A DNA stretch of 56,501 nt, taken from Obrimoposthia wandeli (lineage: Eukaryota). The notes beneath the pieces are model-generated. The model ran no database searches. It was not told the origin of the DNA and was given only the letters and a program-made list of their open reading frames with translations. Shown here in pieces: positions 1-52,725 of the stretch (the stretch's first letter is position 1; the number at the start of each line of letters is the position of its first letter). Position numbers and translations under genes: made by a program. The DNA is taken from NCBI GenBank assembly GCA_977020255.1, contig CDROCS010001491.1, forward strand, positions 441,500-498,000. Reading direction: 5' to 3'.

Positions 1-1000
1 ACTAGGAAATTGATAAACTACAAGTATAAGTGAAGGAATGTTAAGTTAAAACCTAGCAATATGCAGCTACACACGTATTTTAATAATAAAATTGATTTCT
101 ATTATCATAAAGGATTGATTCAAAAGGAACAGTTATATCAGAAGATGGTTTAGAGAGACTGTCAGTTAAACAAGGAGATCATAAGAACTAAGTTAGCACT
201 AGCTATTTCAAATCCATACATGGCAGCACCACTATTACCTCTAGGCGAAGGAGTATTTGCTAAAACCATGGGATAAGTACTGTATAGTTATAAGTACAAA
301 AACGTAGTGGTACAGTTGAGAAAAACAGAGCGATGCACAAGCGAATTGCCAGTGACGTATAATTTAAAATCACTCTTTGTAGAACCTATCACGAGAATGA
401 TACTTCCTAAAGACACTCCAACAAAAGAAATCAGCTGCTCCAATTATGGCACCTGAATATCAGATGACGAGTGATCTATGGATAACTTTACCTGACCGTA
501 AGCGAACAGCGACTCCAGAGATAATAAAAATGAGGACACTTAAAGAAAAAATGAACTTAAAAGCGGTAAGGAAAATTGAAAATGCAGGTTTATACAATGA
601 GAAAGATCTAAAAACGGCCTGGAACGAAATAATGTTTCCAGTAATAAGGACCAGAGTACTTATGGAAATTGTACATCGTGCATTACCACCAGGAGCTAGA
701 TATGCGAATTTTGATATGATATTGTTGCCAAATCATTTCAAAGAAGCAGCACATCAGACACTTAGGAAAATGTGGGGAAAATTCCTTGTTTTAGGACAAT
801 TATTTTCAATTATCATATAGGTTTTTATATTATAATTAAATTAGTACAGGTAATTATAGCTCAGGTGTTGTCTACATATAGTTTGTACAGGATAACCGGA
901 ATCACTTGGCAACTTATAATTGGATGTTTTCCATTTTTAGCGAAATATCTAATGTATCATCATCACGAGAATGAGTTACGAGCCATCAAGAAGGAGCAAC
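1..1000 (+). pseudogene. Chuvirus/Monjiviricetes-like fusion glycoprotein (env-like), C-terminal half with TM region; disrupted
   Basis: Frame +1 reads DCQLNKEIIRTKLALAISNPYMAAPLL..GEGVFAKTMG*VLYSY...VQLRKTERCTSELPVTY..KSLFVEPITRMI, frameshifts into ORF 446 (MAPEYQM...GLYNEKDL...IMFP...WGKFLVLG) and ORF 772 (hydrophobic FYIIIKLVQVIIAQV...GITWQLIIGCF). Pattern recognised as chuvirus-type glycoprotein; stops at 31, 151, 274. Confidence 0.8.
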
Positions 1001-1304
1001 ATCAAGCTAGAACTATACTACGAGAACCAAAGAACCGCCATGACGACGACAACGACGATAACGATAGTCCAAGAGACTATACAAAAATACCAAATACAGG
1101 ACATCCAAAGATCCCACTAAAAAACAAGAAGGAGCCAACACCAAACCTATATCCAATGAAGGAATTGAAGGAAGAGAAAGAAATGTTCAAGAGAGGCATT
1201 TTAATGATAAGACGGCCTAGAGTGAACTATAATGAGATTCCACAGAAAAAGATTTTAAAAATAATTCCAGAAGAACTCTGAAGTCTAGGATATCTAACGA
1301 GAAT

Positions 1305-1592
1305 CCGAATGATCCACCACAAGTAGCAGTAACAATGAACGGAAAAGAATATCTTACCGATGTCGATACTGGATCTGCAGTATCAGTACTGAGTAAAGAA
1401 ATCTTGTCATCAAAAGAATTAGAGGAAATATGTCCTAGGAAACAAACATTTGTCTACGTAAAGGGAACAGATGTAGTATCAGAAGGAACACTGAAATGTA
1501 AATTAACTATTGATGGAAGAGCATTGCAGATAAATGCCAAAATATTCACAGATTGTGGTAGTCCAGTCATGATTGGAATGGACGTGATATGA
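1305..1592 (+). pseudogene. Retropepsin-like aspartic protease (copy 1)
   Basis: PPQVAVTMNGKEYLTDVDTGSAVSVLS ... SPVMIGMD: catalytic DTG and distal IIGxD-like motif. Confidence 0.85.
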
Positions 1593-1859
1593 ATGTTTGA
1601 AGGAATAATAATAGTACCAAACAACAAGAGTTCAAAGAACAACAGTTGAGTGAGAGAGCTAAAGATGTTGAGAAGATCTACAGATAATGGAAAGACTACA
1701 CTAGTTTATATATAGGAAACATGTACCGGAACAGGAGACAGGAAGTGTTAGTGAGGTCGTTAATTCATTAAGAAGGAGTAAATGACGAACTACAAGCAAT
1801 GCGTAAGAGGGAATTATAATATGACACATTGAGAAACAAGGATCCTTCTAGATTTGAAA

Positions 1860-2870
1860 AGCACAGACGAAGATCACTAGAACCAAATTTTTCAAAATAA
1901 ATATTATGCAAAATGGCGAGAACTGGTTTACAAATGTTAAACGGAGACACGACTGATGACTCTGGTTTTAAAAAAGTAGTACGTTATATAAATTGTAGAA
2001 TGAATTTTAGAAATTGGGAAGACGTATATAACCCAATGAAACTATATAAATTGAAAGCGCCAACATGGCCATTCCTCCTAAACCTGAGAACTGCAAATGA
2101 ACCAGAAATTCAAACTGGGAAAGCACCTGACTTTGACAATAGTGATCAGATTCCAGAAAGAGAAACAGCCCAAATAACAGGCATGTGATAAAAAATAGTC
2201 GAATTGAAGATATATTCGAAGTAATGCGAGAAATAAACGAATGTGACGAACAATATCGAAAAGTAACCTTTGAAGATTCAAGACTTAAAAAGCTGGCAAA
2301 TAAGGGACTATTTGCTATAAAAAAGGATGGTAAAGAAGTAATTAAATGTCATAAATGCAAAAGAAACGAATTATTGATAGATATACTCTTGAGTTACCTA
2401 AAAAAGGTTTACATCATTTACATACATTTAAAAAACAAAAAGAACCAAAAACAGAATGTATAGTTGAATACCAAATAACACGAAAAGATATTTTGGCTCA
2501 ACAAGACACACTAGTAGTGTCATTCGTGAGAAGATTATATCCAAAAGAATCAGACAGGATCAGAGAATTGGTAGAATTGAAAATAAAAATTACACGGAAT
2601 GGATACGGATCAATTTTTGAATTATTACGAGATAAAAATGACAGTACAATTGAACCAAAGGAGAAAGAGTACATAAATGAATTAGAATACATGCTGGAAG
2701 ATCCGGAATGTGCAGTTTGCATGATCAACAAAGTAGAAGTTGCCTTTTTACCGTGTGGACATGTGAGAACATGTCGGAGATGTGCAAACGAAATGTTAAC
2801 ATGTCCGATTTCTAGAAAGATAATAGATCGACAAGTGAGAAATATTAGATCTCACTATCCAAACAAAGGA
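1860..2870 (+). pseudogene. IAP-like module (BIR, divergent BIR, C-terminal RING) inside the retroelement
   Basis: BIR1: RRRSL..KMARTGL...VR[Y]INC-X16-[Y]-X6-[W]PFL, exact BIR spacing with three Zn ligands each one base change away; BIR2-like: YRKVTF..KLANKGLF..VIKCHKC; RING: CAVCMINKVEVAFLPCGHVRTCRRCANEMLTCPISRKII (IAP-type C3HC4). Confidence 0.82.
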
Positions 2871-2929
2871 AGTGGACCGACAAAATGTAATAATTCGATA
2901 AATACAATATACCATATGGGAAATATAAA

Positions 2930-3030
2930 TGGAGCACAGCGACCAGCAGCTATCATTAGAGTCAATAATTTGAAAATAAAAGCCTTAATTTACACGGGCG
3001 CAGTAACATCGATAGTGAGTGAAGAAGCAC
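2930..3030 (+). pseudogene. Second aspartic protease remnant fused by deletion to the RT-RNase H connection
   Basis: IRVNNLKIKALI[Y]TGAVTSIVSEE (D to Y in DTG) followed directly by AQQALEDLKVRLIKAP. Confidence 0.75.
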
Positions 3031-4680
3031 AACAAGCGTTGGAAGATCTAAAGGTAAGACTGATAAAAGCACCGATATTAGCGTTTCCGGATATAAATCG
3101 ACAATTCATACTAATGACAGATGCAAATAACTATGCTGTAGAAGCAGTATCAGGACAAGAGGATAAGTAAGGAAGAAAACACGTCATCGCATATGCAAGT
3201 ATATGGTTAAATAGAGTAGAAAGAGGATACTCTGTTATCGAAAAGGAATGTCTAGCCATAGTATATTCATGTAGACAGTACAGACACTACTTGCTAGGAC
3301 AAAAAGTATTCCTGTATACAGATCACAAACCACTACAGTTCTTGTATAAACATAGAGACGAGATGAGCCAATTAAACCGATGGTTTCTGAAATTAGCTGA
3401 ATTTAATCTAGAAATCTGATATAGAACCGGAAAGTCGAATGGCAACGCAGATTGTTTGTCGAGATTTGCCAATGTAGATGAAAAAGGAAACATTATTCAA
3501 TAAGAAGGTCAAGGTGAAGTCAATGACCAGGGAGGAGAAGCAAATATACAGACAAATTTGCTGAAAACAGTAAAATAGACAAATAAATCATCAAGGAACA
3601 GAAGGAAGATAAAGAATTGAGTCTAATCAAAGAACTGTTAGTGAAAGAAGATCTAAATGATGAAATGACGAGAAAATACTCGATAAAAGAAGGAATATTG
3701 TATATTGTCAACAAAGTCGGAAAGATAGTAGTAGTAATTCCGAAGTCATTGAGAACGGCAGTGATGATCCAGTATCACGATGGAACACTGGGAGGACATC
3801 TGTCAGGACGAAAGACAATATCGAGAATTAAAGAGAAATACCATTGGGATGGTATGGAAGACGAGATAAAACAACAATTCAAAACCAGAATGCTGAAACA
3901 ATAGCACAAATCCTGGTAGAAGAGATAATATTTCGATATGGAGTACCTAGAAAATTATTAATTGATCAAGGAAAGAATTTCACTGGAGAAGTAATAAAAG
4001 CAGTATCGAAGATATTCGGAATTATGAAGTTACAAACTTCACCATATCACCCACAAACTGACGGTCTAGTAGAAAGGTTTAATAAAACTATCTGTATGAT
4101 GATACAATCTTATTGCTCCGATAAGCAAGATGATTGGGATAAGTATTTACCTTCATATTTATATGCTTACAGGAATTCAGTTCGAGAGGTGACGGGCCAC
4201 ACACCATTATATCTGATGTATCTCAGACAGAACAATATGCCAATGGATCTGGAGTGGACCCAACCAATATCTCAGTACCTAGAAACTGAAGAATACATTG
4301 TCGTCATGAAAGAAAGACTACAAGATTCTTGGACTAATACAGGGTTGAAATTGAAATTCAATCAAGAAAATTACAAGGAACAATACGACAAGAAAGCAAA
4401 ACCACACGAATTTAGAGTCGGAGATCAAGTGATGCTATTCTATCTAGTAATCAAACCAATTATATCGTTTAAACTTCATAGACCATACAAAGGACCATAC
4501 AAGGTGATACAGACAACCTCAACAAATTTGAAAGTAATCAACGAGGAGATCAGGAACAAAGAACCGATGATAGTACATGCGAACCGATGTAAACTGGTAC
4601 CGAATAAAGATAATGCGTCACGATATGAGCTACAATCACAGAAATTGAAGCCGAATACCAATACAATTAAACTTACATGA
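3030..4680 (+). pseudogene. Pol remnant: RNase H, integrase Zn-binding region and truncated integrase core
   Basis: Motifs as above; RT core (YxDD) absent; integrase lacks the segment between EDEIKQ and IQNQNAETIAQ. Confidence 0.9.
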
Positions 4681-5204: not shown

Positions 5205-6079
5205 ATATTTCGAAATTAAATTACATATTTTACCTACAACAATTTCTGGAGTATCAATTTTTGAGAAGTTATTTTTTTTATAATCTTCCATTAAATCTGG
5301 AGATAATTTAATGTTTAATTTATTCCAATTTATTTTATTATCCATGTTATAAAAATTATTATATATAAAATTTTTATATTTAATATGCTGATGCAAAATA
5401 TTCAGACAATTATGTAACATATTTAGACAATTATGTAACACTATATATAAGCAATAAAGACAAAAGAAAAAATAATATTAAAAAAATTTTTTTTTGCCTC
5501 TTCCGGTTTATTCTGGAGGATTCTCTTTCTTGCAGCTCGCCGATTGTCCTCCATCTCCTCTCTTATTTTTTAATCCAGTTTTTTTTAACCAATTCAATTT
5601 TTTTGTTTCACTCCACGATCCGTTGTAGTTCTGCTAGCCACCTGTCCTGAATCTCCACTCTACTATTCCACTCAGTCGCGACATTTGTGTAGAGATTCTG
5701 ATTGAGGAACCTCTTTCTTAAATCCCCTTACTTCTAATTTCTCCTGATATTTTCTTCTATCTTTGTCACGAGACTTTTCATTTTAATAAATTCCATATTT
5801 TAATTATGAAAAGGTTAATAATATATATAAATTTAAGATATTTTTAATCCAATCACATTCAATTAAATTTTATATTTTTATTTATCATATGACAGTTTAA
5901 TAAATCTATAACTAATCATTGCATTTCTATATAAATTTTAAACTTTAAAAAAATTTAAAAACATGTAGAATTATTCCTAATTAATCCAATCACATTCAAA
6001 TAAGTTAACTATTTTTTTCATCTTGATATTTTAATAAACTTAAATATTGTATTTTAATATTACCCTGTATATATGTATT

Positions 6080-7350
6080 GCTCGTTAGGCCATGGCGGGC
6101 CTGAAAGGCACGCGTTGGCCCTTAGATGGCTTCTCAGGCACTTCCTCACTCTGAGGGAGCACTATGAGATTTTCAATTTTAAAGGGTGTTAAATGGGGTT
6201 AATTAGTTTTTCAGGGTGTTGGGCGGGGGTAGGGTGATAGAAAATTTCACTCCACACACATGTACTCCGCACACATACTCAAAATTTCACTCCACATACA
6301 TGCACGGTTTTAAAGGACAGTGGTAGCCCCCCCGGTGGAGGGAGGAGGAAGTGGATTAGATCGGACACATCCACCTACTAACTATATGTTGTATCTCCAA
6401 ATTGTACAAATTCGAATCGTTGCCTTTAAAACTTACAATCTTCAAATTCTATAAATTGTTGTATAATCTCCAAATTCTATATTCATTAAAAGATCCACGA
6501 TGGGGATATATCAAAAATCAAATTGTAACCACTAAATTGTTGTCAAATATATTTTGAGAATTACTTATTGATAAATTGTTTTAGATGAAATTGTGTCACA
6601 ATAATGTTAAGTTGCTTTAAGTCTGCAGTTTTATAAGGGATACATTAGTCCGATATGAAGAAATAATATAAGCAAAACAAAAATGTTTCAGTCTGCTACT
6701 GCTGCAGAAAGTGGGGGTAAATGTCGCCATAGGTAGGGAGACAGCGAAAGGGATAATTGCTACAAAATAGGGCAGATGGAAAAACTGCAATTCCCAAGCC
6801 AGCTTCGACTGCAGAAGGACCAATCCGATTCCGGATCACAGAAGAATATCAGTTCTAGGTCCGTATGCACAATATAAATCCCCACAGCATTTGGGCAGCC
6901 AGAGATTAAACTGCTTTGGAGATAGTGGCAGGGAGTTAGAGAGGGATGGAAGAGGAGTGGGCATTAGAGAGGCGGTCGATGCTGCTGTCCGAAATGTCAG
7001 ATGCAATGGTCCGTTTTGTAGTTTCCGTGCATGGATGATGGAGGAGGATGATAAATGTGATACCGTGAAGGTAGGCAGAGAACGCTACCAGTTGGATCCG
7101 GGTAGTTTCAGAGCGGTTAGGCAACCGATCAGGTCTAGGGCTGCCCGAGACAGAGAGGCCGCTGCTACTGGGTGGTTAATATTTTGAGGGTTAAAACCGC
7201 TTTACTTTTTTGTCAGATTTATCTCTGACATTTTGCCATCTCCCTGATGAGGCCAAGGTAGGCCGAAACGGGTTTATCCCGTCGGAGGTTGACTTAGAAA
7301 AATACCTCCCTGATTAAGGGCACCTCAGCAAAAATGTCAATTTTAATTGA
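6080..7350 (+). mobile_element. Non-autonomous hammerhead-bearing retroelement (Penelope-like pLTR or retrozyme-like), putative
   Basis: GC-richer island bounded by a degenerate hammerhead-like motif (6081-6123) and an intact one (7239-7289) with weakly similar downstream sequence; no RT or GIY-YIG recognised. Confidence 0.45.
7239..7289 (+). ncRNA. Type I hammerhead ribozyme
   Basis: CTGATGA (7244-7250), stem II GGCC/AAGGTA/GGCC, GAAA (7265-7268), stem III ACGGG/TTTAT/CCCGT, GTC cleavage triplet (cut after 7283), stem I ATCTCC (7238-7243) pairing with GGAGGT (7284-7289) with one G-U. Confidence 0.92.
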
Positions 7351-7439
7351 TCTAATTTAATTTATTTTAAAACCCAATTTTTATTGATATAATTTAATTT
7401 ATTTCGAAACCCAACATATATGAAAAATTACTTCTATAA

Positions 7440-7690
7440 ATAACTATAAATAACTCCAATAAGACCATCGTTTTGCTTCAGTAAACCCTTATGTTTATCA
7501 GTTGCCCTTTTCACATTAATAATATTACGCAAATCCTTGCGATTTTTTCGAAGTTTTGATTGTGTTTAACGATATTTTACAAAACTTCAACTGATCTATT
7601 AATTACAAAAGATTTCAAAGATTTCAAAATAGCAGGTCTAAATAGCAGGTGTGGCTTTAATAGAGTTTGAAAGTATAGAGTAACTCTGTT
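7440..7690 (-). pseudogene. Polinton small basic core-like protein (QKGGF-type), decayed
   Basis: NIVKHN..KLRKNRKDLRNIINVKRATDKHKGLLKQNDGLIGV; homologous to ORF 31067 (DIVKGKV...RQKGGFIGALL). Confidence 0.55.
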
Positions 7691-8039
7691 GGACTGCATT
7701 ATTAGAAGCGGTCGATGAGTTTACAGGTTAATTTTGTTAGTTGGATTATTATCATTCTGTTTAGGTGTGTTGTTCAACTTTTACCATTTCCGTAAAATTA
7801 TTTACGTTTTCTTGACTTTTTTGTCAAGCTGACTTTTTCTTAGGCTGAAATATTGATGTTACAACTTTACGTTGCTTAAGTACACAGCTTATAGTCGTTT
7901 TCACTTCATTATTTTTCTTAACAGCTGATTCTCGTTAATTTTAATATAATCATCAGATTTATATTTAGAAGCTGTAGAAAAGGCATCATTTCATTATTAA
8001 AAGACATAATTAATGGTTTTAAACGCGAGTCTTTTGATT

Positions 8040-8600
8040 ATAAACATAGGCATTTGTGAAAATATCTGTTATCACAAGTATATCATTGCGATATCCCGGT
8101 TAAAAATCCAGAAACAAATAACGGGGGATTTCTACGTTACATCTTTAAATGCATCAATTACATATAATCTGATATAGGGAAAAGATTGTCATGCAGCAAA
8201 ATCAAAGACAGTCTGATCTCTCAGATTATAAACTAACATCAAATAATGCAAGTTCAAATTTCTAGTACGATGTTGACTACCTTGATGAAAAATGTGTGTT
8301 GAAACATAGTAACTGTAACATGCATATGCTTGGAAATCGTTGTAAGTATGATTAACACTTGCGCCTTTATTAGCTTTTTCATACAAATCATCAAAAACAA
8401 CAACATTTTATATTATTTTAACATATCTGATCAATTTCCATCAAAACCATCAATGAATTTCACCTGGTTTACAAACACTACCATAATGCCAATAGATTTT
8501 GTCAAATTTATCATAAGCTTGTATTATCTTGTATTATTTGATTTCAAAATGGGTTTTACCACTACCAGATTGTTTTTACATACTTTTTATTAACAAATAC
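8040..8600 (-). pseudogene. Polinton genome-packaging ATPase (A32/FtsK-HerA type), decayed
   Basis: Walker A QSGSGKTHF, Walker B VVVFDDL, then THIFHQGSQHRTRNLNLHYLMLVYNLRDQ and YLFLDF motifs. Confidence 0.88.
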
Positions 8601-9326: not shown

Positions 9327-10135
9327 CAAAGGTATGATTTTTCAAGACGGTGTCGACTTTAGATAATGAGATAACTTGTATATTTTTTCGAACTACATTA
9401 GAAAATTGGTCACGCAACGATTAACCAATGAAACATCATAAGAAAATTTGTACTGTATGTTCATTCATTATAAAAATCTATGTATCTAATAAACACACGG
9501 TGGTTAAACAGGGCGAAGATATTATAAATTTTGATAAAACTCCATTGGATAAACCAGTTGTTCGTAATAATGATTAAGATCATATTGTAATTTCTATATG
9601 ATCGATTATTCCACATGTATATATTTGAATTAATTTATATCAGTATTGTGTTTGTCAGAAAGTAGTACGTCATCTTGATTGCATTGCAGCTATTCCGGGA
9701 GAAATTTCTTATATATCAGAGGGACCTAGTATAGGTATCAAGAATCCATTTATTGCCGAATAATATTTAATATGATTAAACTATTATTTAAATAGACACT
9801 CGCCAGATAAATCTGTTGAAACGTTATTACAGTCTAAATAGAATAAAGTCAGTTTAGTAAATATTTCTCTAACACGGGGTAAACATTAAGACTCAACATG
9901 TGAATTTCTAATCAATTTAACATTTTTACAATTAAAAACTGAAGACAGGGTTGTAAATTATCTTGAATATTTATTACCAGATCCAGAATGTGTTGTTTGC
10001 ATGTTAGACATGATTGAAGTAGCATTCTTACCATGTGGACACTTAAACACATGTAATAAATGTTCAGTCGCTTTATTACATGCCTATATTGTAAGAGATT
10101 TATTATACAGGAATGTATATCAGATTTCATGGTAA
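9315..10135 (+). pseudogene. IAP-like gene (BIR + RING), Polinton-borne
   Basis: DLAKV*FFKT..DNEITCIF[F]RTTLENWSRND*PMKHHKKICTVCSFI fits BIR C-X2-C-X16-H-X6-C with the second C mutated; RING DPECVVCMLDMIEVAFLPCGHLNTCNKCSVAL, then frameshifted CLYCKRFI. Confidence 0.85.
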
Positions 10136-10269: not shown

Positions 10270-12285
10270 ATGTCAAGGCATTTGTCTGTACATCGAGAAT
10301 TTGTAAAAAAAGAAACATACACTATCAACTTTTCATTAAATTTTATGAGCAAAGTTGGTTGTATGATTCCTGAAGCAGAGACTGCAGCCAGTAAAGTATG
10401 CGAAAACGAAATATTGATGCAGAGCTGTCGGCGCTTGATGTATCCAAGGTCAAACCTAAAGCTTCATTACATCTACTCTTTCATTTTATTATGGTTTATA
10501 TTATCATAAAAGTCTCCTTATTAAAAAGTATAATGCCATAGCTACTGTTGCTACTCTTGGGAAATTTATTTTATACTCCAAACTTTAGAGAAATATTTAT
10601 CTTTAACTGCATATGCTGAATTCTCTGCAGTTTTTGAGCGGCTCTTTAAAATAATTAATGACATATTTAAATGGCCAATTACACAGTCAGTGTTCCCAGT
10701 TTCGATTAATGATAAGGAGATTTTTCAATATAATTTGTGAAAACTTTCACAGATTTACAAAATACAACATAAATCAACCCATAACTGCATTCGAGAGTGC
10801 ACGTCTTCAAGACTCTAATGAGGTACTTACATTTTGGGATTGTAATTGTCAAAATCTTGTTGAGTCTATGCTTTTTTATATGAAGTTAGACATTTATTTA
10901 TTGGCTGATTTGTTTGAGTTTTTTCCTGTAAAATCTTTAGCAGAAGATGGGCTAGATCCCATGCATTTTTTTAATTTACTTGGTCTTTCATGGGCAACGG
11001 CAATAAAAACTCCTTATATTAATGTTGAGTTATTGCAAGATCCTATGATGTATCAAATGTATGATTATGATATACGCGGTGGAATGACTTTTGTCAACAA
11101 ACATCATGTTGTCAAAAATCAATCCATGGAGATTCTGTACATCAACATAATTAATTTGTATAGGTGGGCGCTTACTCAACCTCTACCACATGCCAACTTT
11201 AAGTGGATGTGTGATGTGGAAGAGTTGAATAAGTTGATGACAGATTTGCCTACTGTTGATACAGTTTCGTCAAATGTCGGCTATTTGGTTGACGTCGATT
11301 TAACAATCCCTCCTAATGTGCATGATTAATTGTATGATCTTCCAGTGCACCTATTCATCAATGTCCACCTAATTTAAAGGTTAAAAAATTATTGTTAACA
11401 CATGAAGACAGGTTGAATTACGTGTTGCATTGGCGGCTTCTTCAATTCTATATAAAGTAAGGAACAAAATTTACTCGAATTAATCGTGCTATAAGCTTTA
11501 GTCAAAACCTTTTGTTTAAAGACTATATTTAGAAAAATTCTAGAAAACGTTATTTGGCCTGTAGCAATTCAATCGACATTTAAAAATCTTTGAAAAATCT
11601 GTAAAGGACTTGCGGAAACGTATTTGTTTACGATTTTGCTATAATGAGTGCAAACTAATAACATATATTACCAAGTACAACTTCAAGCATATTTACCATT
11701 GCAGATTACTTGGTAAATTTTTTTTATTAGGAAAACAGAGTATTGTCACGATCGATTGAGTTATGTAAATCAAACTGTATTAGGTATTTCAAACCCTATA
11801 TTGTATGGGCTCCAATATATTGAATTATATAAATATCGCAATGAATTCAACTGTGAATTCAAACACTGACTCTTTCTTTTTACAATCTAGAAATGTTAGT
11901 TTACAATATCTGTTATTTCTGAAAATGTTTAGGGATAACTTACTTGATACCCATAAATATCCTGTTAATCATCATTTACACTGTAGGGTCAGATTTTGTA
12001 TGATGACTGTATTTTCCTACGCCTTTAATGCTACAGTTTACATACATCTAATAATACATATTCAATGAGAGCAAAGGGTGTGGGAAGAAACAATCTCACC
12101 ATGAGGCCTACCGGAAAGTGTATGATACTGTATGTAATGAAAGCGTTGAGCAAACTAAATTTATTTTAAGACCCAATCAACAGTATTTCCATAAGTCAAC
12201 AAAAATTGTTGTGAGTAGTTATGACGACAAACGCTGTTGGGTAGAAAAGAACGCTGGTCTGGCTTATGGACATTTCCGAATTTAA
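10270..12285 (+). pseudogene. Protein-primed DNA polymerase B (pPolB), decayed
   Basis: YMKLDIYLLADLFE...GLSW...IRGGMTFVNKHH...INLYRWALTQPLP...GYLVDVDL; C-terminal RAKGV...SSYDDKRCWVEKN..LAYGHF. Confidence 0.92.
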
Positions 12286-19459: not shown

Positions 19460-20968
19460 ATGTCAAATGTAAACAATTCCATGCTATTTTCCTTATCGTC
19501 CGAAGTAAATGGCATTGACAAGTGTGCAAATGATATCGACAATGTATTTCCAATTAGAATAAAGTCAGAACTTAAAGCATATAAGAAATACCAAAATAAG
19601 TTGAAGTTTAAAAGTCATAGATGTTCATATAATTTGTCTAACATACCGATTGATAATTTGTGGTTAGAAGTCCAGACAGCTAAGTTTCAAAAAACCCAAA
19701 AAAATAATCAGGCTGGGTTTGTAAATGTATTCAACAATCTTAATAATTATACCTCGGAAGCTCAATTATTTTTATTACCACTGATATACTTTAAATTTTC
19801 GTATGAGACTTTAGAGTATAATGAAATCAGAACAGAGTTTTTCCCTATAATATCTGATTGTACCGAAAAATATTACGTGTTTACTGAGCATTCTTTCCTG
19901 TCCAGATTGGAATCTAATATCAAAAATGTTAATTCTAATCTGGTGTATGAAATTCAAACCAAAATAGCCCTTATCCAGATTCCGAGTTGTTTCCACACAT
20001 ACTCGTATCCCAAATATATCAGAGATACCATATTCAAAAAGAAAAGGTTGATTACTAACCGTAATTTTACTCCTCCGATGAATTCTAATGCCTGCCTCTC
20101 TTATGAATCTCCGGAAACTGACAAGTCTTCAAATAAGGTCTGCAGCCTTTTCAATGCCGGCTCTATATCTTCATCGATGGGCTCAGACATTGATAAGATC
20201 CAGTTTGGTGCCGTGTTTGCCAACCAAAACAATATCCAAAATCCGGAGCTGTTGAATTCATTGCCAAAGCTCTGGAACCAGAATCTTTTGATATCAATTG
20301 ACTACATTCTTCAAGCATCTGTTATTCCAAAATCGTGGATTATTCTCTTTCAGTTTTCGGACTATTATGTAGATGTCATCATACAATCATTGCTTCGCGT
20401 TTTCATTTTAGAGTCAAACTCGTTCTGTAAAGTCAACCGAAAAACCAAGAAACGGAATATTCGCAGTTCAAGCTATAACATAATTCTCCGGAATTCTCTA
20501 CGAAATCTCTTCAGACAGGTTCAATCAAGCATCATGGCGTCAACTTTAAAGGTGGCTATCGATGATTTCTTTGAAGAGAATTGTTTGAAAGGGCATATCT
20601 TCTCAAAACATGGTGTGTGCAGGAAGAAATTAACTGAGAAAACATTCGGAAGAAAGGAACTGTTGACTAAACATTCCACTGACTTAGACCGCAGATTGAA
20701 ATTAAAGAGGGACTTTCAGAACAGTGGTATTAAGAATCGACGATTGACGAAGTACAGCTCTGCGTTTCAGTATGCAAAAGAAAGAGGCAAGTGCAACTCT
20801 CAAACTGTTCTAAAAGGAATCGAAAGGGCGTCAGAGCAAGATCTGAATTCAAAGAATCGGAACACGTTAGCCTCGAAATTCAGAATGGAAGGTGATGTCA
20901 CCAATCATTTGACACAGAAGCTGCGCAAAAAAGCTGTTAGTTTGTGTACTTTCTTTTTGACTTTTTAG
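19460..20968 (+). CDS. Hypothetical protein (502 aa), no recognised domain
   Basis: Longest non-repetitive intact ORF, AAAATG start context; a possible terminal intron from GTTAGT (~20936) to TTTGTAG (~21014) would end it ...KKA|IFSM*. Confidence 0.6.
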   Translation: MSNVNNSMLFSLSSEVNGIDKCANDIDNVFPIRIKSELKAYKKYQNKLKFKSHRCSYNLSNIPIDNLWLEVQTAKFQKTQKNNQAGFVNVFNNLNNYTSEAQLFLLPLIYFKFSYETLEYNEIRTEFFPIISDCTEKYYVFTEHSFLSRLESNIKNVNSNLVYEIQTKIALIQIPSCFHTYSYPKYIRDTIFKKKRLITNRNFTPPMNSNACLSYESPETDKSSNKVCSLFNAGSISSSMGSDIDKIQFGAVFANQNNIQNPELLNSLPKLWNQNLLISIDYILQASVIPKSWIILFQFSDYYVDVIIQSLLRVFILESNSFCKVNRKTKKRNIRSSSYNIILRNSLRNLFRQVQSSIMASTLKVAIDDFFEENCLKGHIFSKHGVCRKKLTEKTFGRKELLTKHSTDLDRRLKLKRDFQNSGIKNRRLTKYSSAFQYAKERGKCNSQTVLKGIERASEQDLNSKNRNTLASKFRMEGDVTNHLTQKLRKKAVSLCTFFLTF

Positions 20969-22245: not shown

Positions 22246-25200
22246 ATGTATTTCAAACAACTAATAATTTAGTATTGCCTCCAAAATGTGAATTTCCTCA
22301 TAGTGTTACATATTATAAATTTAATTCAGCTCACACAATGTGGGAAAAACTAAGTTGCACTAATATTAAAGACTATATATGATGTAATATATGCGTCTTG
22401 ATGTATACTCACTTTGTGATGTATATGAGGCTTTTAGACAAAAAGTTAAATCTGGTGATAATCATGAGGCTTTTAATTTCTATACTATTCCGGATCTTAG
22501 TTGATGTAGTGCAGTATAATCATTAACACACAAAGTAGAATTGATGCATGAACCCGAAATGTATAATCTCTTTGAAGCACATATTAGAAGAGGTATGACT
22601 TTTTTCAATAAACATTATTGTAAAACCGATGATAGTAGATCACTTCTCTATATAAATGTAAATAATTTTTACGATTGGGCTTTAAACCAACCTTTACCAC
22701 ATGTGTAATACCTTTCCGTTTACTACTATTCTATGTTTTTGATGGTGCTGAAATATTAAAAATTCCTTGGGCTATTCGGTTTTGACAAGCACCCGTTTTA
22801 AAACAATATATATATTTTAATTCAAACAAGTGGTAACTAGTGTCAATAAATTTGAATATGAATTTTATAAGTTGAAAAATAATTTTATTTACGGTAGAAC
22901 GGTTGAAAATCTTAAGAGGCGGCTTGATATTAGATTATGTAATAATTATAAACGGTTTTAAAAATTAGTTTTGAGTCCTTGGTTTAAATAATTATTTATT
23001 TAAATTTAGTTTTTATGTGGAAACAATAAATATATTTAGATGGGCCTTCCTATATCTGTCAAGATGTACTTGATCTATCTAAATTATGAATGTATAAATG
23101 ACAATATATTGAGCTTGAACGGAAAAGACAAAATTTTAATTGTAGTATTCGAATTGTAGCCATATACACAAATTCTTTTTTCCTTGAGTTTGTGTATATT
23201 AATAAGGATAAATTACTTAAAGAAATGATTAAGAATGGGTACAAGTAATTGTCCTAAAACACATCCCTTGTATTCAGAGAACTTTAAAGCTGTAATTGAA
23301 AATGTTAAAGATGAAAGTGAGGGTACTGATTATAATGAGATGGTTTTCTTAAAACGAAAATGTTTCTCACTTCAAAATAAATCAAAGGCTAAAGGTATTT
23401 CTTTAAAACAAACTAATTTAAGACATCAAGAGTAGCTCAATTGTTATGAAAATGAATAAATTATTAGTGTTAACCAGTCACATATAGCATCGGTTAACCA
23501 TCAGCTTCATACAACATTTACGTCTATAGTTGCTTTAAAATATTTTGATGATAAAATGAGATGGGTTAGTAAGAATAAAAGCCTAACTTATGGTCATTTC
23601 AGTTTAACTTAACAATTTGTAAATAAGATATATATAGATTTTGTTGTATGATTTTATATTTAATGTTGTTGTATATTATCATTTGTGTACATACACATAC
23701 GTTAGTAGTTCATGTAAGTTCAGTTGAAAATAAATAAACTTAATATAGTCACTTTGACATTAAAGGAATGTCCAGAGATATGTTCAAACCTTCAACAATT
23801 AGAGAGGGGGAAAGTCTTGTCAAGCAATACTTATTAAACAATTAGTAGCAATTGGTAAGATTATACGGCGATTTCCCTCACCATTTTTTCTATGTATGTG
23901 ATGAATAATTTGAATAAACGTATCACATATATACATGAATAAAGCGGTCAGTTTTGTAAATAAAAAGTTCAGAAATTTAAAATATATTTGGTCAAAAATG
24001 GTTTTAATTTAGCATATTCGGTTTTGCCATATAATTGGACCAATACAATAATAATTTCAATTTTAAAGTAACTGGTTTACATACTACAATTTTTACTTCA
24101 ACAAACAAATAAGTATAAAATAATAAATATGAAGATCAGATTTTTTTCCTGACCAACTACTTTAGGATAAAAGAGTAAATTTTAAAATATTATAAAACTC
24201 ATTGATTAAAAATTGTTGATTAAAAATCTTCGACAACTTCCACGTGAGATTTTTTATGATATAGAGTCATTTATTTAAATATAGATGAAGCATTTAAAAT
24301 ATCAAACAGTCCATGCTGTATGATTTTCTCTGGTGATAAATGATCTTTCTAGGCATAATTAATAGTTTCTCCCAATTTCAGTCTCTGGAGATCTTCTAAT
24401 CGAAGAACAAATTGAACTATCTCTGAACATTTTGTTTTATCAAAAGTTATTTGACAAAATGATGTGTAAGTAAAAATATTTCTCTGACAATCCAAGATCT
24501 CTTAAACTTTCAGATTATTTTCAATTTAAATACTTTCTAATATGAAGCTGCTACGTCAACTCATATACATAATCAGGTATATGTCTAATTTCAAATGATC
24601 GATTTGACGTAGCTTTGTCGCAATTATTTAACTTATTAACACTGATAATATTTGTTAAATAAAGAAATCTAAGAGATCAGTTTCAAAAAAAGATAATTTC
24701 TGATTACTACGAATATTTATTTCTCTGTATGAAATTCCTCGACTATCTTTTTGTGATTTACTCAAATAACTCTATGTTAATTAATCAAATATTCAGTCAA
24801 ATTCGGTAGAAAATGGAGATTTATTTGAGACCCAGTTTTAAATAATTTTATGATTGATCATTTGATTTATTGTCAAATCATAGTGTGACAATCGTGTCTG
24901 ACTCAATGTCCTCTTCAATATTCCCGAGTTTTGTTTGCTTTGCTGCCTTTCGGATGCATGCTGCTTTCATTTGTGTCTCTAATTTCTATATTATAAATAA
25001 AACACGCTCCAGAACATTTTAAATTATCATTTACATTAAATATATGTTATGTTCAATATTCAAAGTTTTAACACTTAACTGATTTTGGGGTCTTTGAAGA
25101 CTCCAATGGATTTTCAATTGACCATTACACTTGCATACATGTTTGATCAAACTGATTAGATTTTTTCGCGAGAATTAGTTTTTTTCAATGTATACGTAAG

Positions 25201-26326: not shown

Positions 26327-29302
26327 TGTTGGGGTTTCTATACGAAACTTGTACAGATCCTCTTATGTGCGGAGGGCCCCAACGTGAGTTCGAATAGAAG
26401 CAGGTCTTAAAGTTGGTCGTGGCCTACTTAGTGTTATGGTTGCCTATCTCTATTTCTTATCTGAAGGTGTTTGGTTTGACGTCTCTTAATCTGAAGAGTT
26501 TTAAAAACAACGTGTTCTAATGTAGGAAATTGTTTATTGGTAGCACACTAAACTGAACACAACAATACGTTTATGTACGTATTCTCTAAAAAGTATAATA
26601 AAAATTCCTAAGACTTCTGTAAGTCTCTACAACAAGTGGGGATGAACCACGTATCGATTTTACGGTTATGTTTGTTTTAGTCACTAGAGTCTTTACTCTA
26701 AAAATAGGGATTGATTTTAGAGAGCTGTTGCTCTAAAATTTGAGTAGCCTAAAGAGCTGAAGCTCTAAAACAGAGAATGAATTTAGGGAGCTTGTTGCTC
26801 TAAACTGTGCTGATTTGAATTTTAGCTTCAATATTGATGTTCACTTAAGTTTAGATTCCCTTACGAGACAATAGGTATACTTTATCAAAATTCCTGAAAT
26901 CCTTTTTTAAAACAATCGATTTACTATATCGAGATTAATTTCGTTTTCCAATATTTCCGTTTACTTTATTTAAATTTCGAAATTCAAAATATCCTACGAT
27001 TTCAAAATTCAATTATCTTATTATTTCTTTCACGACAACAGATTATTTTATTCGAAATATCTTATGATTTCAAAATTCAATTATCTTATTATTTCTTTCA
27101 CGACAACAGATTACTTTATTCAAAATATCTTACGATTTCAAAATTCAAATATCTTATTATTTCAATTTGTCTTCACGACAACATATTACTTTATTCAAAA
27201 TATCTTATCTTATTATTTCAATTTGTCTTCACGACAACAGATTACTTTATTCAAAATATCTTATGATCTCACAATTCAATTATCTTATTATTTCAATTTG
27301 TCTTCACGACAACAGATTACTTTATTCAAAATATCTTATGATCTCAAAATTCAATTATCTTATTATTTCGATTTGTCTTCACGACAACAGATTACTTATT
27401 TCAAAATATATTACGATTTCAAAATTCCAATATCTTATTATTTCAAAATGTCTTCACGACAACAGATTACTTTATTCAAAATATCTTATGATCTCAAAAT
27501 TCAAATATCTTATTATTTCAATTTGTCTTCACGACAACAGATTACTTTATTCAAAATATCTTATGATCTCAAAATTCAAATATCTTATTATTTCAATTTG
27601 TCTTCACGACAACAGATTACTTTATTCAAAATATCTTATGATCTCAAAATTCAAATCTTATTATTTCTTTCATTATTTCAAAATTTGTCTTCACGACAAC
27701 AGATTACTTTATTCAAAATATCTTATCTTATTATTTCAATTTGTCTTCATTACTCAAAATATCTTATGATTAAAATTCTTATTATTTCAATTTGTCTTCA
27801 CGACAACAGATTACTTTATTCAAAATATCTTATGATCTCAAAATTCAATTATCTTATTATTTCTTTCACGACAACAGATTACTTTATTCAAAATATCTTA
27901 CGATTTCAAAATTCAAATATCTTATTATTTCAATTTGTCTTCACGACAACAGATTACTTTATTCAAAATATCTTATCTTATTATTTCAATTTGTCTTCAC
28001 GACAACAGATTACTTTATTCAAAATATCTTATGATCTCAAAATTCAATTATCTTATTATTTCAATTTGTCTTCACGACAACAGATTACTTTATTCAAAAT
28101 ATCTTATGATCTCAAAATTCAATTATCTTATTATTTCTTTCACGACAACAGATTACTTTATTCAAAATATCTTACGATTTCAAAATTCCAATATCTTATT
28201 ATTTCAAAATGTCTTCACGACAACAGATTACTTTATTCAAAATATCTTATGATCTCAAAATTCAATTATCTTATTATTTCAATTTGTCTTCACGACAACA
28301 GATTACTTTATTCAAAATATCTTATGATCTCAAAATTCAATTATCTTATTATTTCAATTTGTCTTCACGACAACAGATTACTTTATTCAAAATATCTTAT
28401 GATCTCAAAATTCAATTATCTTATTATTTCGATTCTTCTGGCTCACCTCCCAATCTGCAGATAATTTCTGGCTCGTTCGGTGCCTGGTTCCGACGCTTTT
28501 TTGTCTCCTCTCGGTACTTGATCTCGGAACAGCGACTTTCTGTCCGCTGAATTGTGGTTTACGCCTTGGATAGTTGGCGTGCCTCGTTTCTGTTCTGTAC
28601 GTTTGTTTTAATGATTTCTTCTCTAACTATTTTCTTACCTCTGCTGATCGGCTTGGCGTCCGGTCTCGATCAGAAGTGAGCTTGTTTCTGGAACTATTGA
28701 ATTCCACGAGAATTTTCTTGTTACTGAATTCCAATCGGTTGGGATAGGCTGAGAATTCTGCTTTCTCTCGATCTGGAATTAGTCTCTTTGAAATATTGAT
28801 TTTTTGGGCTAATTTCCGTAGACTATATAGTCTATTTCTCTGACTCTCTTCGGTGACTTCCAATCAACGACTTATATAGTCGATATAAATCAGCTGCCTA
28901 CTGAGTTCTGGCTTTTCTAATGATTTCCCGGTGACGTGATCTGTCACTCAGTCTTCTGGTTTGCTGCGATAAGTATTTATTTCAAATAAATTAATTAAAT
29001 TTTCTCACTTCAGGAACAGCTGTCGGGACGTGGCTGCTGACGTCGACTGAATTCCGGTTTGCACTTCTTCTTTTCCTTTTTTCCAATTTTCCAATTAGTC
29101 TTCTTTTCTTGCAATAACTTGCAGAGCTATATCTTTTTTGGGGCCCTTTTGTTAGATATAAATTTCTATACATACCTACACATTTCACACGACCTTCGTG
29201 GTTCTCTAACATTTAATCTTATTTAACCCAATAATTTTAATTTTGATTTTTAAAATTTATTAAATTAAATTCTAACCTTGCTTTCAAGGATTTTCATTTT
29301 CA
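26327..29302 (-). mobile_element. Solo LTR-like element (family A, copy 2) with expanded tandem array, inserted in ORF-Y
   Basis: TG...CA ends, near-TSD ATAT/CTAT; homologous blocks with 13398-14896; the interrupted frame resumes (NFSAFIKAD...|FKRIYNYSEEEFPKS) and matches the uninterrupted copy at ~21700-21950. Confidence 0.8.
26990..28432. repeat. Tandem array of ~20 units, 75-bp consensus with 68- and 56-bp deletion variants
   Basis: ATTCAATTATCTTATTATTTCAATTTGTCTTCACGACAACAGATTACTTTATTCAAAATATCTTATGATCTCAAA. Confidence 0.97.
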
Positions 29303-34199: not shown

Positions 34200-35040
34200 A
34201 AACTATCAATTACTTTTTATGTAATGAAATATTACAATAATAACTTATCTTATTGCAGTTCAAATGCAGAAACTGGCTCAAGGCATGCTTCATGATATGA
34301 TGCATATCGTAGCCCCGCAAGCTGTGAAAAATAATCGGGAGACTACGACTCAACCGCCTACTGAGGTTACACTTGAAATGAGCCACACCGAGAAACTCCC
34401 CTTTCATATGATCATGATTGCGCTTCTTGTTCGCAACTCGCTTCTTTCCCAAATAGCAGATTGGAGTTGAGTTGAAACTAACAATCTGTACTGGCGTAAG
34501 TGGGCACATAGCTTCGGCGGCATGGCTTCCATACCTAGGGCACACAATCTCCTTCACTAGCTGCTTTAGATTCTTCAAAAACTCAACAACACAAGACTCA
34601 CCAGTAAAAGCAGAGTACTCGTGCTGGAAAGTAGTGGAATCCACTGAAACAGGAGAGAACACCATACCCGCCGCAATTGGAAGGCGGATTTGATGGTGAA
34701 TCCCATGCGGTGGTAGTACTGCTTCGAAGTCGAAGTAGAGGGAAAACGGAGGAGAAATTGTCTAGCTCAAGTCTGAATTCACAGTACTTGTTTATAAGCA
34801 TCTGGTACAGAGTTGTATACTCTGTATTCGAAGTGCAGAGGGACACATGCTTATTGAACGCCTACACTCCGTGGATACATTTGTGATACCACGTACATTG
34901 AATACGAGTTGCAGTCCGTCTGTTCCTATAGTTAAATAACATATTCAACTAAAGTACTACTACGTAGTGGTAAGTGCTATCATTTTCAAGTAAAAGCAAG
35001 TTGACGGGCTTTCCTGCTAGATTAGTGGTTCGGTAGATCA
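34200..35040 (-). pseudogene. pPolB fragment from a different, GC-richer Polinton lineage
   Basis: FTGESCVVEFL...CYLG...RNHDHMKGEFLGVAHFKCNLSRR...IIFHSLRGYDMHHI; markedly higher GC than its flanks. Confidence 0.88.
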
Positions 35041-40159: not shown

Positions 40160-40324
40160 CTTTAACTGCTGATTGGTTTTCTTTAAAAATTGTATTTCTT
40201 CATGATGCTTCTTTTCCTCGTTTTGTCTTTGTTCCTGAGCGCGTAGTTCAATCTGTTCTGCCTTCATGATGAGGTCATTTACTTGGCGCTCAAGGTCTCG
40301 TTTTTCAACCTCCAAAACTATAAT
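40160..40324 (-). CDS. DNALI1: DNALI1/p28 penultimate coding exon
   Basis: TTTAG|IIVLEVEKRDLERQVNDLIMKAEQIELRAQEQRQNEEKKHHEEIQFLKKTNQQLK|GTAATC. Confidence 0.95.
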
Positions 40325-52539: not shown

Positions 52540-52725
52540 CCGTCTGTCCATTTCGGCGTTGCCTTGTTCAGCCTGAAGTGCCTTGCGCATTCCAAATGCG
52601 ACACTGGACTCGTAGAGAGATTGGTAAGCAGCTATAGTCATACGAATCTCGTCCCTCACGCGCAACAACAATAGACCACGTTCCGCACAGTTAATTGTCA
52701 CCTGTCGGATCAGCTCATCGAATAC
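52540..52725 (-). CDS. DNALI1: DNALI1/p28 internal coding exon (upstream exons not found in window)
   Basis: VFDELIRQVTINCAERGLLLLRVRDEIRMTIAAYQSLYESSVAFGMRKALQAEQGNAEMDRR|GTATGT; donor certain, acceptor (ATCAG| at 52726) inferred. Confidence 0.95.

What the first reader, a model, noticed from the sequence alone, without database searches (positions are those of the whole stretch)
7239..7289. Canonical, apparently intact type I hammerhead ribozyme
Seen: all core nucleotides are present (CUGAUGA, GAAA, GUC), with 4-bp stem II, 5-bp stem III and 6-bp stem I. Known: type I hammerheads mark Penelope-like elements and metazoan retrozymes, which yield self-cleaved and circular RNAs. It appears unmutated although surrounding elements are heavily decayed.
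Basis: partly seen in the sequence, partly recalled or inferred. Interest (0 to 1): 0.8.

Follow-up and report, generated by a model that had tools for sequence, protein, structure and literature searches.

The report
Solitary intact type I hammerhead ribozyme
A complete self-cleaving hammerhead ribozyme motif really is present at 7238-7289, but it stands alone with no second copy and no retrotransposon genes beside it, so it is most likely an ordinary leftover of a ribozyme-carrying mobile element of a kind already known in animal genomes.

Summary
Positions 7238-7289 (+) carry every conserved hammerhead core nucleotide. Helix I has 6 bp (one G-U), helix II has 4 bp with a 6-nt loop, and helix III has 5 bp with a 5-nt loop. 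The cleavage site follows C7283. Helix I is the open one, so this is a type I motif.

It is the only credible Rfam match in the window: Hammerhead_1, 29.5 bits, window-wide E = 0.0031. That is below the family's gathering score of 34; the visible departure from the model is a 9-nt insert in helix III where the consensus has 2. A strict descriptor found no hit in 170 million bases of shuffled window, and none in 80 million bases of random sequence with the local composition.

The window has no second hammerhead, no tandem repeat unit, and no reverse transcriptase or GIY-YIG endonuclease nearby. The motif lies 41 nt inside the 3' edge of a 640-nt GC-rich non-coding island. That island has no relatives in any collection searched.

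My best reading is a solitary remnant of a retrozyme or Penelope-type element. It should be able to cut a + strand transcript, but it cannot release circles from this locus. A downstream ACCUCC can compete with helix I. This is a new member of a known kind, of low interest.

The parts
7238..7243 (+). Helix I, 5' strand (AUCUCC)
   Evidence: Pairs with 7284-7289; 6 bp including one G-U
7244..7250 (+). Catalytic core box CUGAUGA (C3-A9)
   Evidence: Read directly; aligned to the Rfam core
7251..7264 (+). Helix II: GGCC / GGCC with the 6-nt loop AAGGUA; G10.1-C11.1 pair present
   Evidence: The validated coral retrozyme hammerhead has the same GGCC stem (supplement of PMC7229834)
7265..7268 (+). 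Catalytic core box GAAA (G12, A13, A14, A15.1)
7268..7282 (+). Helix III: ACGGG / CCCGU, 5 bp, with the non-palindromic loop UUUAU
   Evidence: It appears as a 9-nt insert relative to the Rfam model
7283..7283 (+). C17: predicted self-cleavage between 7283 and 7284 (GUC triplet)
   Evidence: Position in the motif. The chemistry comes from established knowledge of hammerheads; it was not tested here
7284..7289 (+). Helix I, 3' strand (GGAGGU)
7304..7321 (+). ACCUCCCUGAUUAAGGGC. It repeats the first 11 nt of the hammerhead with one change, 66 nt downstream, and has a dead core (CUGAUUA). Its ACCUCC pairs perfectly with GGAGGU 7284-7289 and so competes with helix I
   Evidence: 9-mer match; p about 0.013 for such a recurrence within 100 nt; alternative fold favoured by 4.5 kcal/mol in the 124-nt context
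7226..7236 (+). 5' arm of an outer helix (UGACAUUUUGC) that pairs with 7329-7340
   Evidence: Fold of 7222-7345, z = -2.86, 0 of 200 shuffles as stable. A prediction only
7329..7340 (+). 3' arm of the outer helix (GCAAAAAUGUCA)
6690..7330 (+). GC-rich (46-54% GC) non-coding island with the hammerhead 41 nt inside its 3' edge; flanks are 13-29% GC. Probably the body of the element the ribozyme came with
   Evidence: Composition. Its 138-aa open frame has no Pfam match and no homologue. No other Rfam family matches

Best explanation
This is a genuine, structurally complete type I hammerhead ribozyme that survives as a single copy. It most likely arrived as the 3'-terminal module of a hammerhead-bearing retroelement. 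That element would be either a monomeric copy of a non-LTR retrozyme or a strongly 5'-truncated or non-autonomous Penelope-type insertion (pseudo-LTR plus hammerhead plus short tail). The body of that element would be the GC-rich non-coding island 6690-7330.

Mechanism, inferred from the anatomy. If the + strand is transcribed, for example by read-through, helices I to III form a three-way junction around the CUGAUGA and GAAA core. The RNA then cuts itself between C7283 and G7284. This leaves a 2',3'-cyclic phosphate on the upstream piece and a 5'-OH on the downstream piece. The 5-bp, non-palindromic helix III should let the motif act as a monomer, without a partner copy.

There is only one cleavage site in the window. 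The locus therefore cannot release a unit-length RNA to be ligated into a circle. At most it truncates a passing transcript. Once the downstream ACCUCC (7304-7309) has been transcribed it can capture the 3' strand of helix I, so cleavage would have to happen co-transcriptionally.

Shown: the motif, its completeness, its statistical support, its solitary state, and the absence of coding partners. Inferred: the catalytic competence, the retroelement origin, and the folding competition.
For: The motif and all core positions are present. Hammerhead_1 is the only credible Rfam match in the window, at E = 0.0031. The strict descriptor gave 0 hits in about 170 million strand-bases of shuffled window and 0 in 80 million of island-like sequence.

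The architecture (6-bp helix I, 4-bp helix II with a 6-nt loop) is the one described as canonical for metazoan type I hammerheads (PMC4209133). The helix II stem GGCC is identical to that of the experimentally active coral retrozyme hammerhead. Invertebrate type I hammerheads with a stable helix III are reported to cleave as monomers (PMC7761336).

Dispersed monomeric retrozyme copies are reported as common (bioRxiv 10.64898/2026.07.22.740005). Penelope-type insertions carry the hammerhead near the 3' end, followed by a 30-40-bp tail, and favour AT-rich targets (PMC8557442; PMC11167929). Here the GC-rich island ends 41 nt after the motif and abuts 15-23% GC DNA.

The island is non-coding. It has no Pfam match and no homologue among 5.8 billion word-indexed proteins or 1.84 billion representatives. 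The window is a transposon-rich animal-type locus, with axonemal dynein exons separated by a 12-kb intron plus Gypsy-like and B-family DNA polymerase remnants.
Against: No other copy of the motif or of the island could be found: not in the window, not in metagenome, viral or prokaryote collections, and not in phage or plasmid records. Multi-copy status, the hallmark of a mobile element, is therefore untested. The source genome itself was not available.

No target-site duplication could be shown; an ATTTTAAT on both sides is not significant in such AT-rich DNA (by eye). No tandem unit, pseudo-LTR or reverse transcriptase/endonuclease gene is present.

Helix III is longer and less palindromic than in the coral, mussel and axolotl retrozyme hammerheads. 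The score is below Rfam's gathering threshold.

The isolated fold is not unusually stable (z = -1.07). In a longer context the predicted minimum-energy fold is an inactive alternative.
Confidence: 0.55

Rival explanations
1. The hammerhead is a host-adopted element. It would act as a monomer-competent cis-cleaving module defining the 3' end, or controlling the stability, of a GC-rich non-coding transcript from 6060/6690-7330. This would be analogous to the amniote intronic hammerheads or the Clec2 3'-UTR hammerhead.
For: It is a single copy with a stable, non-palindromic helix III suited to acting alone. It sits near the 3' end of a GC-rich island in a very AT-rich genome; in my experience, not tested here, such islands often mark transcribed sequence. 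A good splice-acceptor-like site (tttcag) lies at 6690 (by eye). The enclosing outer helix and the competitor hairpin could form a switch (z = -2.86). Retrozyme copies that overlap exons tend to lie in 3' UTRs.
Against: There are no expression or conservation data. No Rfam family, promoter or polyadenylation signal was identified. The open frame upstream has no homologues and only a TTG start. Adoption by the host is rare compared with the thousands of junk copies reported.
Confidence: 0.15
2. It is part of a currently active retrozyme or Penelope-like element that produces self-cleaved and circular RNAs from this locus. This is the stronger reading implied by the first reader.
For: The ribozyme is intact. 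A degenerate repeat of its 5' start lies 66 nt downstream. Retrozyme families with units as short as 51-98 bp have been reported.
Against: The second copy has a dead core (CUGAUUA) and lacks helix II and GAAA. Tandem Repeats Finder and the repeat search find no unit around the motif. A putative decayed second copy at 7650-7830 scores no better than chance. No RT or GIY-YIG domain lies nearby; the only YVDD motif in the window is 38 kb away on the other strand.
Confidence: 0.05
3. It is a chance match: a hammerhead-like string with no ribozyme ancestry.
For: The score is below Rfam's gathering cut-off (29.5 against 34). The isolated fold has z = -1.07. There is no second copy and no covariation evidence. 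The scan as a whole examines many windows.
Against: The strict descriptor gave 0 hits in about 250 million strand-bases of control sequence. The relaxed descriptor gave only 19 hits in 1500 shuffled windows. The window-wide E = 0.0031 is already corrected for 4227 families. By my own arithmetic, for the single family this scales to roughly 0.01 expected hits per gigabase genome. All 11 invariant core bases and the preferred G10.1-C11.1, C15.2-G16.2 and GUC are present at once.
Confidence: 0.05
4. The island and its ribozyme are foreign DNA, either a bacterial, phage or viral insertion or assembly contamination. Type I hammerheads with long helix III resemble bacterial and phage motifs.
For: The island has about 48% GC against about 30% for the window. 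Thirty IMG/VR contigs carry the same core with a GGCC helix II, and some are type I with a long helix III. Fungal and protist Penelope-like elements carry 'bacterial-like' type I hammerheads.
Against: The island has no match in phages or plasmids. The exact core is absent from 185,579 prokaryote genomes and from metagenome contigs. No protein-level relative was found. The IMG/VR hits differ in helices I and III and lie in gene-dense phage-like contigs. The island is continuous with AT-rich host-like sequence on both sides, with no assembly gap.
Confidence: 0.05

Closest known systems
Canonical metazoan type I hammerhead ribozymes of non-LTR retrozymes (for example Acropora millepora Amil224 and Mytilus galloprovincialis Mg353; PMC7229834)
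   Same: Type I topology. Identical core boxes. 6-bp helix I. 4-bp helix II, with the same GGCC stem as the coral ribozyme. GUC cleavage triplet. Non-coding host sequence below 50% GC in an animal genome.
   Different: No tandem array of 150-400-bp units and no second copy. Helix III is 5 bp with a 5-nt non-palindromic loop, where the validated examples have short palindromic helices. The upstream island of about 640 nt is longer than most reported units. Circular RNA cannot arise from a single site.
[quoted passage not shown]
   Same: A type I hammerhead close to the 3' end of a retroelement-like insertion. It is followed by a tail of about 40 nt and AT-rich target DNA.
   Different: Metazoan Penelope hammerheads are mostly minimal variants, with almost no helix III and a long helix II, that work as dimers. 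This one is canonical and monomer-type. No RT/GIY-YIG ORF or pseudo-LTR repeat is present, and no ORF starts at or after the motif.
Schistosoma mansoni Sm-alpha hammerhead and Rfam Hammerhead_1 (RF00163)
   Same: Aligns over the full model. Same helix I and helix II lengths and a 6-nt loop 2 ending in UA.
   Different: Scores 29.5 bits, below the gathering score of 34. Helix III is 9 nt where the consensus has 2. The loop 2 sequence differs (AAGGUA against CAAAUA). Loop 1 partners for the tertiary contact could not be identified.
Adopted single-copy hammerheads of amniotes (intronic HH9/HH10; Clec2 3'-UTR hammerhead; reviewed in PMC6155905)
   Same: A solitary motif, outside any repeat array, predicted to work as a monomer in cis on a host transcript.
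   Different: Those are defined by conservation across species and location within known genes. Neither could be examined here, and this motif lies about 33 kb from the only recognisable host gene, on the opposite strand.

Membership tests
Hammerhead ribozyme, type I (Rfam RF00163) | Conserved core: C3 U4 G5 A6 N7 G8 A9, G12 A13 A14, A15.1-U16.1 pair, H17 not G | tested here: met
   CUGAUGA 7244-7250, GAAA 7265-7268, A7268-U7282 pair, C7283
Hammerhead ribozyme, type I (Rfam RF00163) | Three helices around the core, with helix I open and helices II and III closed by loops | tested here: met
   6/4/5 bp. The minimum-energy fold of 57 nt is the three-way junction. The descriptor hit is unique in the window
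Hammerhead ribozyme, type I (Rfam RF00163) | Score at or above Rfam's curated gathering threshold (34 bits) | tested here: not met
   29.5 bits. The visible departure from the model is the 9-nt helix III insert. E = 0.0031 window-wide remains significant
Hammerhead ribozyme, type I (Rfam RF00163) | Loop 1 / loop 2 tertiary contacts typical of fast natural type I hammerheads | tested here: inconclusive
   Loop 2 has the canonical 6 nt and ends in UA like the Rfam consensus. A possible internal loop above helix I exists (7235-7237 against 7290-7298, by eye), but no tool here scores tertiary pairs
Hammerhead ribozyme, type I (Rfam RF00163) | Mg-dependent site-specific self-cleavage | not testable with these tools
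   Needs in vitro transcription. The thermodynamic model gives helix I a probability of only 0.27-0.36 before the competitor is transcribed and about 0 after
Metazoan non-LTR retrozyme | Head-to-tail tandem repeats of about 150-400 bp (reported range 51-972 bp), each with one type I hammerhead | tested here: not met
   No array around the motif. One hammerhead in 56.5 kb. The candidate decayed second unit is at chance level. Only a 15-nt degenerate echo lies 66 nt downstream
Metazoan non-LTR retrozyme | Non-coding, below 50% GC, no LTR, primer-binding site or polypurine tract | tested here: met
   Island at about 47% GC. No homologues or domains. No flanking direct repeats
Metazoan non-LTR retrozyme | [quoted passage not shown] | not testable with these tools
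   The source genome and transcriptome were not available. There were no hits in any collection searched
Penelope-like element | ORF with a telomerase-like reverse transcriptase and a GIY-YIG endonuclease | tested here: not met
   No such Pfam domain in open frames from 5.2 to 20 kb. Motif scan: no GIY...YIG anywhere, and the only YVDD is at about 45.7 kb on the minus strand
Penelope-like element | Pseudo-LTRs (partial tandem) flanking the ORF, often with an adjacent inverted truncated copy | tested here: not met
   No direct or inverted repeat involving 6050-7340
Penelope-like element | Hammerhead near the 3' end, followed by a 30-40-bp tail, inserted in AT-rich DNA | tested here: inconclusive
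   The island ends 41 nt after the motif, next to 15-23% GC DNA and a 37-nt AT-rich duplication. This is compatible, but it is not specific without other copies
Adopted host hammerhead (HH9/HH10/Clec2-like) | Conservation at an orthologous position within a host gene across species | not testable with these tools
   No orthologous sequence was retrievable. The organism was not identified; the best integrase relatives are only 60% identical

The most novel reading that the evidence does not exclude
The motif is not junk. It would be a monomer-competent hammerhead retained by the host as a co-transcriptional 3'-end or stability switch for a GC-rich non-coding RNA. The downstream ACCUCC competitor and the enclosing outer helix would decide whether the transcript is cut. 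This would be an invertebrate counterpart of the adopted amniote hammerheads, with a built-in kinetic timer.
Probability: 0.08. Interest if true: 0.55.

Novelty: new member of a known kind. Interest (0 to 1): 0.2.

Why it matters
Type I hammerheads are already known in thousands of copies in animal genomes, tied to retrozymes and Penelope-like elements. One more copy changes little.

Three modest points of value remain:
- The motif is missed by Rfam's default threshold only because helix III is long. Routine annotation will therefore undercount monomer-type animal hammerheads.
- It is a clean candidate for a monomer-active animal hammerhead with a natural competing hairpin. That makes it a convenient substrate for studying co-transcriptional folding against cleavage.
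- If the source genome shows that the 640-nt island is a repeat family, this copy would define the 3' module of a hammerhead-bearing element that matched nothing in the collections searched here.

Tried and rejected
- Default Rfam scan: no hit, because the score is below the gathering threshold. Only the E-value mode shows the match.
- Loose regular expression for hammerhead cores: 29 matches against 15 expected. It was uninformative and was replaced by a structural descriptor.
- The 138-aa open frame upstream (6771-7184) as a possible element protein: no Pfam match, no homologue by word-indexed search or exhaustive HMMER search, and no related loci in metagenome or viral contigs. Rejected as coding.
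- Minus-strand frame 6839-7084: no Pfam match.
- A second, decayed copy of the island at 7650-7830, suggested by short repeats: local alignment score 27, within shuffles (maximum 31) and within other window chunks (up to 33). Rejected.
- Similarity between the two GC islands (6050-6400 and 6650-7340): not above shuffles.
- Rod-like folding of 6690-7335, as expected for a retrozyme circle: z = -1.35, unremarkable.
- tRNA-derived SINE origin: no tRNA-like sequence.
- Bacterial-type promoter and terminator scan: nothing meaningful.
- Exact 26-mer of the ribozyme in metagenome and prokaryote collections: none.
- Looser pattern in IMG/VR: 30 contigs with unrelated hammerheads; the two inspected are gene-dense and phage-like.
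- Literature full-text search for the sequence: none.
- Identifying the organism: the 502-aa ORF is not on record. The integrase's best relatives are 60% identical, on short unnamed metagenome contigs. Abandoned.
- Contamination check against phages and plasmids: negative.

Full report
**The observation**

The stretch reads AUCUCC-CUGAUGA-GGCC-AAGGUA-GGCC-GAAA-CGGG-UUUAU-CCCG-U-C-GGAGGU, from 7238 to 7289 on the + strand. In standard hammerhead numbering:
- C3 to A9 lie at 7244-7250, and G12 to A15.1 at 7265-7268.
- The G10.1-C11.1 pair is G7251-C7264.
- The A15.1-U16.1 pair is A7268-U7282, and C15.2-G16.2 is C7269-G7281.
- The cleavage-site nucleotide C17 is C7283.

Helix I has six pairs (7238-7243 with 7284-7289), one of them the wobble U7239-G7288. 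Helix II has four pairs and a 6-nt loop. Helix III has five pairs and a 5-nt loop. Helices II and III are closed and helix I is open, so this is a type I motif. Only the start is off by one base, because the sixth helix I pair needs A7238.

**Is it more than chance?**

The default Rfam scan of the window reports nothing. The E-value mode shows why. Hammerhead_1 (RF00163) aligns end to end (model positions 1-45 of 45) at 29.5 bits, under the curated 34-bit threshold. E is 1.4e-5 for the local scan and 0.0031 for the whole window against all 4227 families. It is the only credible match in the window.

In the alignment the core and stems agree with the model. The visible departure is nine inserted bases in helix III where the consensus has two. 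By my own arithmetic, the single-family expectation scales to about 0.01 chance hits per gigabase genome.

A structural descriptor of my own finds this site and nothing else on either strand. It requires helix I of at least 5 bp, helices II and III of at least 4 bp, CUGANGA, GAAA and UH. It gave 0 hits in 1500 dinucleotide shuffles of the window. It also gave 0 hits in 80 million strand-bases generated with the composition of the surrounding GC-rich island. A relaxed version gave 19 hits in the 1500 shuffles, about 0.013 per window.

The thermodynamic fold of the isolated 57 nt is exactly the hammerhead junction, but it is not unusually stable (z = -1.07). The support therefore rests on the motif, not on folding energy.

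**Surroundings**

The window is about 30% GC and has no assembly gaps. It looks like a transposon-rich animal locus:
- Two exons of an axonemal dynein light chain gene lie on the minus strand at 52486-52881 and 40109-40324, separated by a 12-kb intron.
- A Gypsy-like remnant spans about 1.2-4.7 kb.
- Several decayed B-family DNA polymerase fragments are present.
- A 75-nt satellite array lies at about 26.9-28.4 kb.

The hammerhead sits 41 nt inside the 3' edge of a 640-nt island (6690-7330) of 46-54% GC. A second island lies at 6050-6400. The flanks drop to 13-29% GC.

The island has a 138-aa open frame (6771-7184) and open frames on the other strand too, as expected for GC-rich sequence. That frame has only a TTG start and no Pfam domain. 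It has no homologue in the word-indexed search or in an exhaustive HMMER search of 1.84 billion representatives. I treat the island as non-coding.

No other part of the window resembles it. The two islands are not significantly alike.

The literature supports the general statement. Canonical type I hammerheads in animals lie in tandem non-LTR retrozyme repeats of about 170-400 nt that give linear and circular RNAs (PMC7229834). [quoted passage not shown] A recent preprint derives retrozymes from Penelope pseudo-LTRs and notes dispersed monomer copies.

The defining features are absent at this locus:
- There is no second hammerhead and no tandem unit.
- A hint of a decayed second copy at 7650-7830 scores no better than shuffles.
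- There are no flanking direct or inverted repeats.
- No reverse transcriptase or GIY-YIG endonuclease appears in any open frame from 5 to 20 kb. The only YVDD motif is 38 kb away on the other strand.
- No ORF starts at or after the ribozyme, unlike the Anolis Penelope element, where the ORF begins in helix II. Here the ATG inside CUGAUGA is followed by a stop after four codons.

One geometric feature does fit a Penelope-type or retrozyme-type insertion. The hammerhead is close to the 3' end, followed by about 40 nt and then very AT-rich DNA. That matches the reported 30-40-bp tail and the preference for AT-rich targets. It is compatible with that origin but not specific to it.

**Architecture compared with validated ribozymes**

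Helix I (6 bp) and helix II (4 bp, 6-nt loop) are the canonical metazoan dimensions. The GGCC helix II stem is identical to that of the active coral retrozyme ribozyme.

Helix III differs. The coral, mussel and axolotl ribozymes have short palindromic helices III, which favour dimer formation. This one is a 5-bp stem with a real, non-palindromic pentaloop. Reviews state that invertebrate type I hammerheads with a stable helix III cleave efficiently as monomers. I therefore predict monomeric activity, but that is inference.

Tertiary loop-loop contacts could not be assessed. Loop 2 ends in UA like the Rfam consensus, and a plausible internal loop exists above helix I.

**A competing fold**

Sixty-six nucleotides downstream, ACCUCCCUGAU (7304-7314) repeats the ribozyme's first eleven bases with one change. 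It then diverges into a dead core, CUGAUUA. A 9-mer recurrence within 100 nt has p of about 0.013 in shuffles of the flanks, a post hoc figure.

Its ACCUCC is perfectly complementary to the 3' strand of helix I. In a 124-nt context the predicted minimum-energy structure keeps helices II and III but replaces helix I with the GGAGGU/ACCUCC hairpin. An outer helix, 7226-7236 with 7329-7340, encloses it (z = -2.86). Forcing helix I costs 4.5 kcal/mol. The modelled probability of helix I is 0.27-0.36 before the competitor is transcribed and essentially zero afterwards.

This may be the relic of a second tandem copy, or it may be a built-in kinetic competitor. I cannot tell which. These models ignore tertiary stabilisation.

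**Search for relatives**

- The exact 26-nt core with helix II is absent from JGI metagenome contigs and from one genome each of 185,579 prokaryote species.
- The island has no match in phage or plasmid records.
- Translated searches of the island in metagenome and viral contigs found nothing.
- A looser pattern hits 30 IMG/VR contigs. Most carry type II hammerheads. A few carry type I with a long helix III, but with different helices I and III, and the two inspected sit in gene-dense phage-like contigs. They are unrelated.
- The sequence does not occur in the searchable literature.
- The organism could not be identified. The largest ORF is not on record, and the Gypsy integrase's best relatives are only 60% identical, on short unnamed contigs.

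Copy number, covariation and orthology, which are the decisive tests, therefore remain open.

**Verdict**

The motif is real and complete. It very probably descends from a functional hammerhead.

The most economical reading, with confidence about 0.55, is a solitary remnant of a hammerhead-bearing retroelement. That would be a retrozyme monomer or a truncated or non-autonomous Penelope-type insertion. It could still cut a read-through transcript after C7283, but it cannot produce circles here.

The alternatives are:
- adoption by the host as an RNA-processing element (0.15);
- an active element (0.05);
- chance (0.05);
- foreign DNA (0.05);
- the remainder is unassigned.

It is a new member of a known kind. 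The only slightly unusual traits are the long, non-palindromic helix III, which also hides it from Rfam's default threshold, and the neighbouring competitor hairpin.

Noticed in passing
window 401-4680 (+): A Ty3/Gypsy-like remnant with aspartyl protease (1335-1592), RNase H (3171-3416) and integrase (3844-4680). A RING finger (zf-C3HC4_3, E = 4e-11) is embedded in the ORF at 2355-3170, where the reverse transcriptase would be expected. Just upstream, an ORF at 446-820 matches the Pfam Monjiviricetes_fusion viral glycoprotein (E = 3.4e-14). This suggests an envelope gene of RNA-virus type associated with a retroelement.
   Followed up: partly
window 9890-10132 (+): A second RING-finger fragment (zf-C3HC4_3, E = 2e-9). 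By eye it closely resembles the one inside the Gypsy-like ORF at 2355-3170 (PEC.VCM...VAFLPCGH).
   Followed up: no
window 33434-34099 (+), 55704-56324 (+); by eye also 10655-11326 (+), 22520-22705 (+), 34213-34761 (-): Several decayed fragments of B-family DNA polymerase (DNA_pol_B_2, DNA_pol_B). One is fused to an Endonuclease VII-like domain. This points to repeated insertions of a polymerase-bearing DNA element, possibly Polinton/Maverick-like.
   Followed up: partly
window 52486-52881 (-) and 40109-40324 (-): Two exons of an axonemal dynein light chain gene (Pfam Ax_dynein_light, E = 7e-34 and 2e-11), separated by a transposon-filled intron of about 12 kb. This is the only recognisable host gene in the window.
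   Followed up: partly
window 26938-28439 (+): A satellite-like array of a 75-nt unit (about 16-21 copies, with higher-order periods of 225 and 274 nt) that creates long spurious open frames.
   Followed up: no
window 19460-20968 (+): The longest ORF in the window (502 aa). It has no Pfam domain, and no gene with exactly this product is on record in the contig collection.
   Followed up: partly
window 7338-7414 (+): A 37-nt AT-rich unit duplicated 2.1 times, directly after the 3' edge of the GC-rich island that carries the hammerhead.
   Followed up: no
window 8192-8600 (-): By eye only: a P-loop-like QSGSGKT near 8560 and a VVFDD Walker-B-like motif in the frame 8192-8407. This suggests a decayed packaging-type ATPase. 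Pfam gave no hit for 8192-8407.
   Followed up: partly
L006 3739-3764, L009 11986-12011, L011 509-534, L021 338-363, L026 13887-13912: Among 30 IMG/VR contigs sharing the CUGAUGAGGCC-N6-GGCCGAAAC core, these carry type I hammerheads with a long helix III. Most of the others are type II. L006 and L011 are gene-dense, phage-like contigs.
   Followed up: partly
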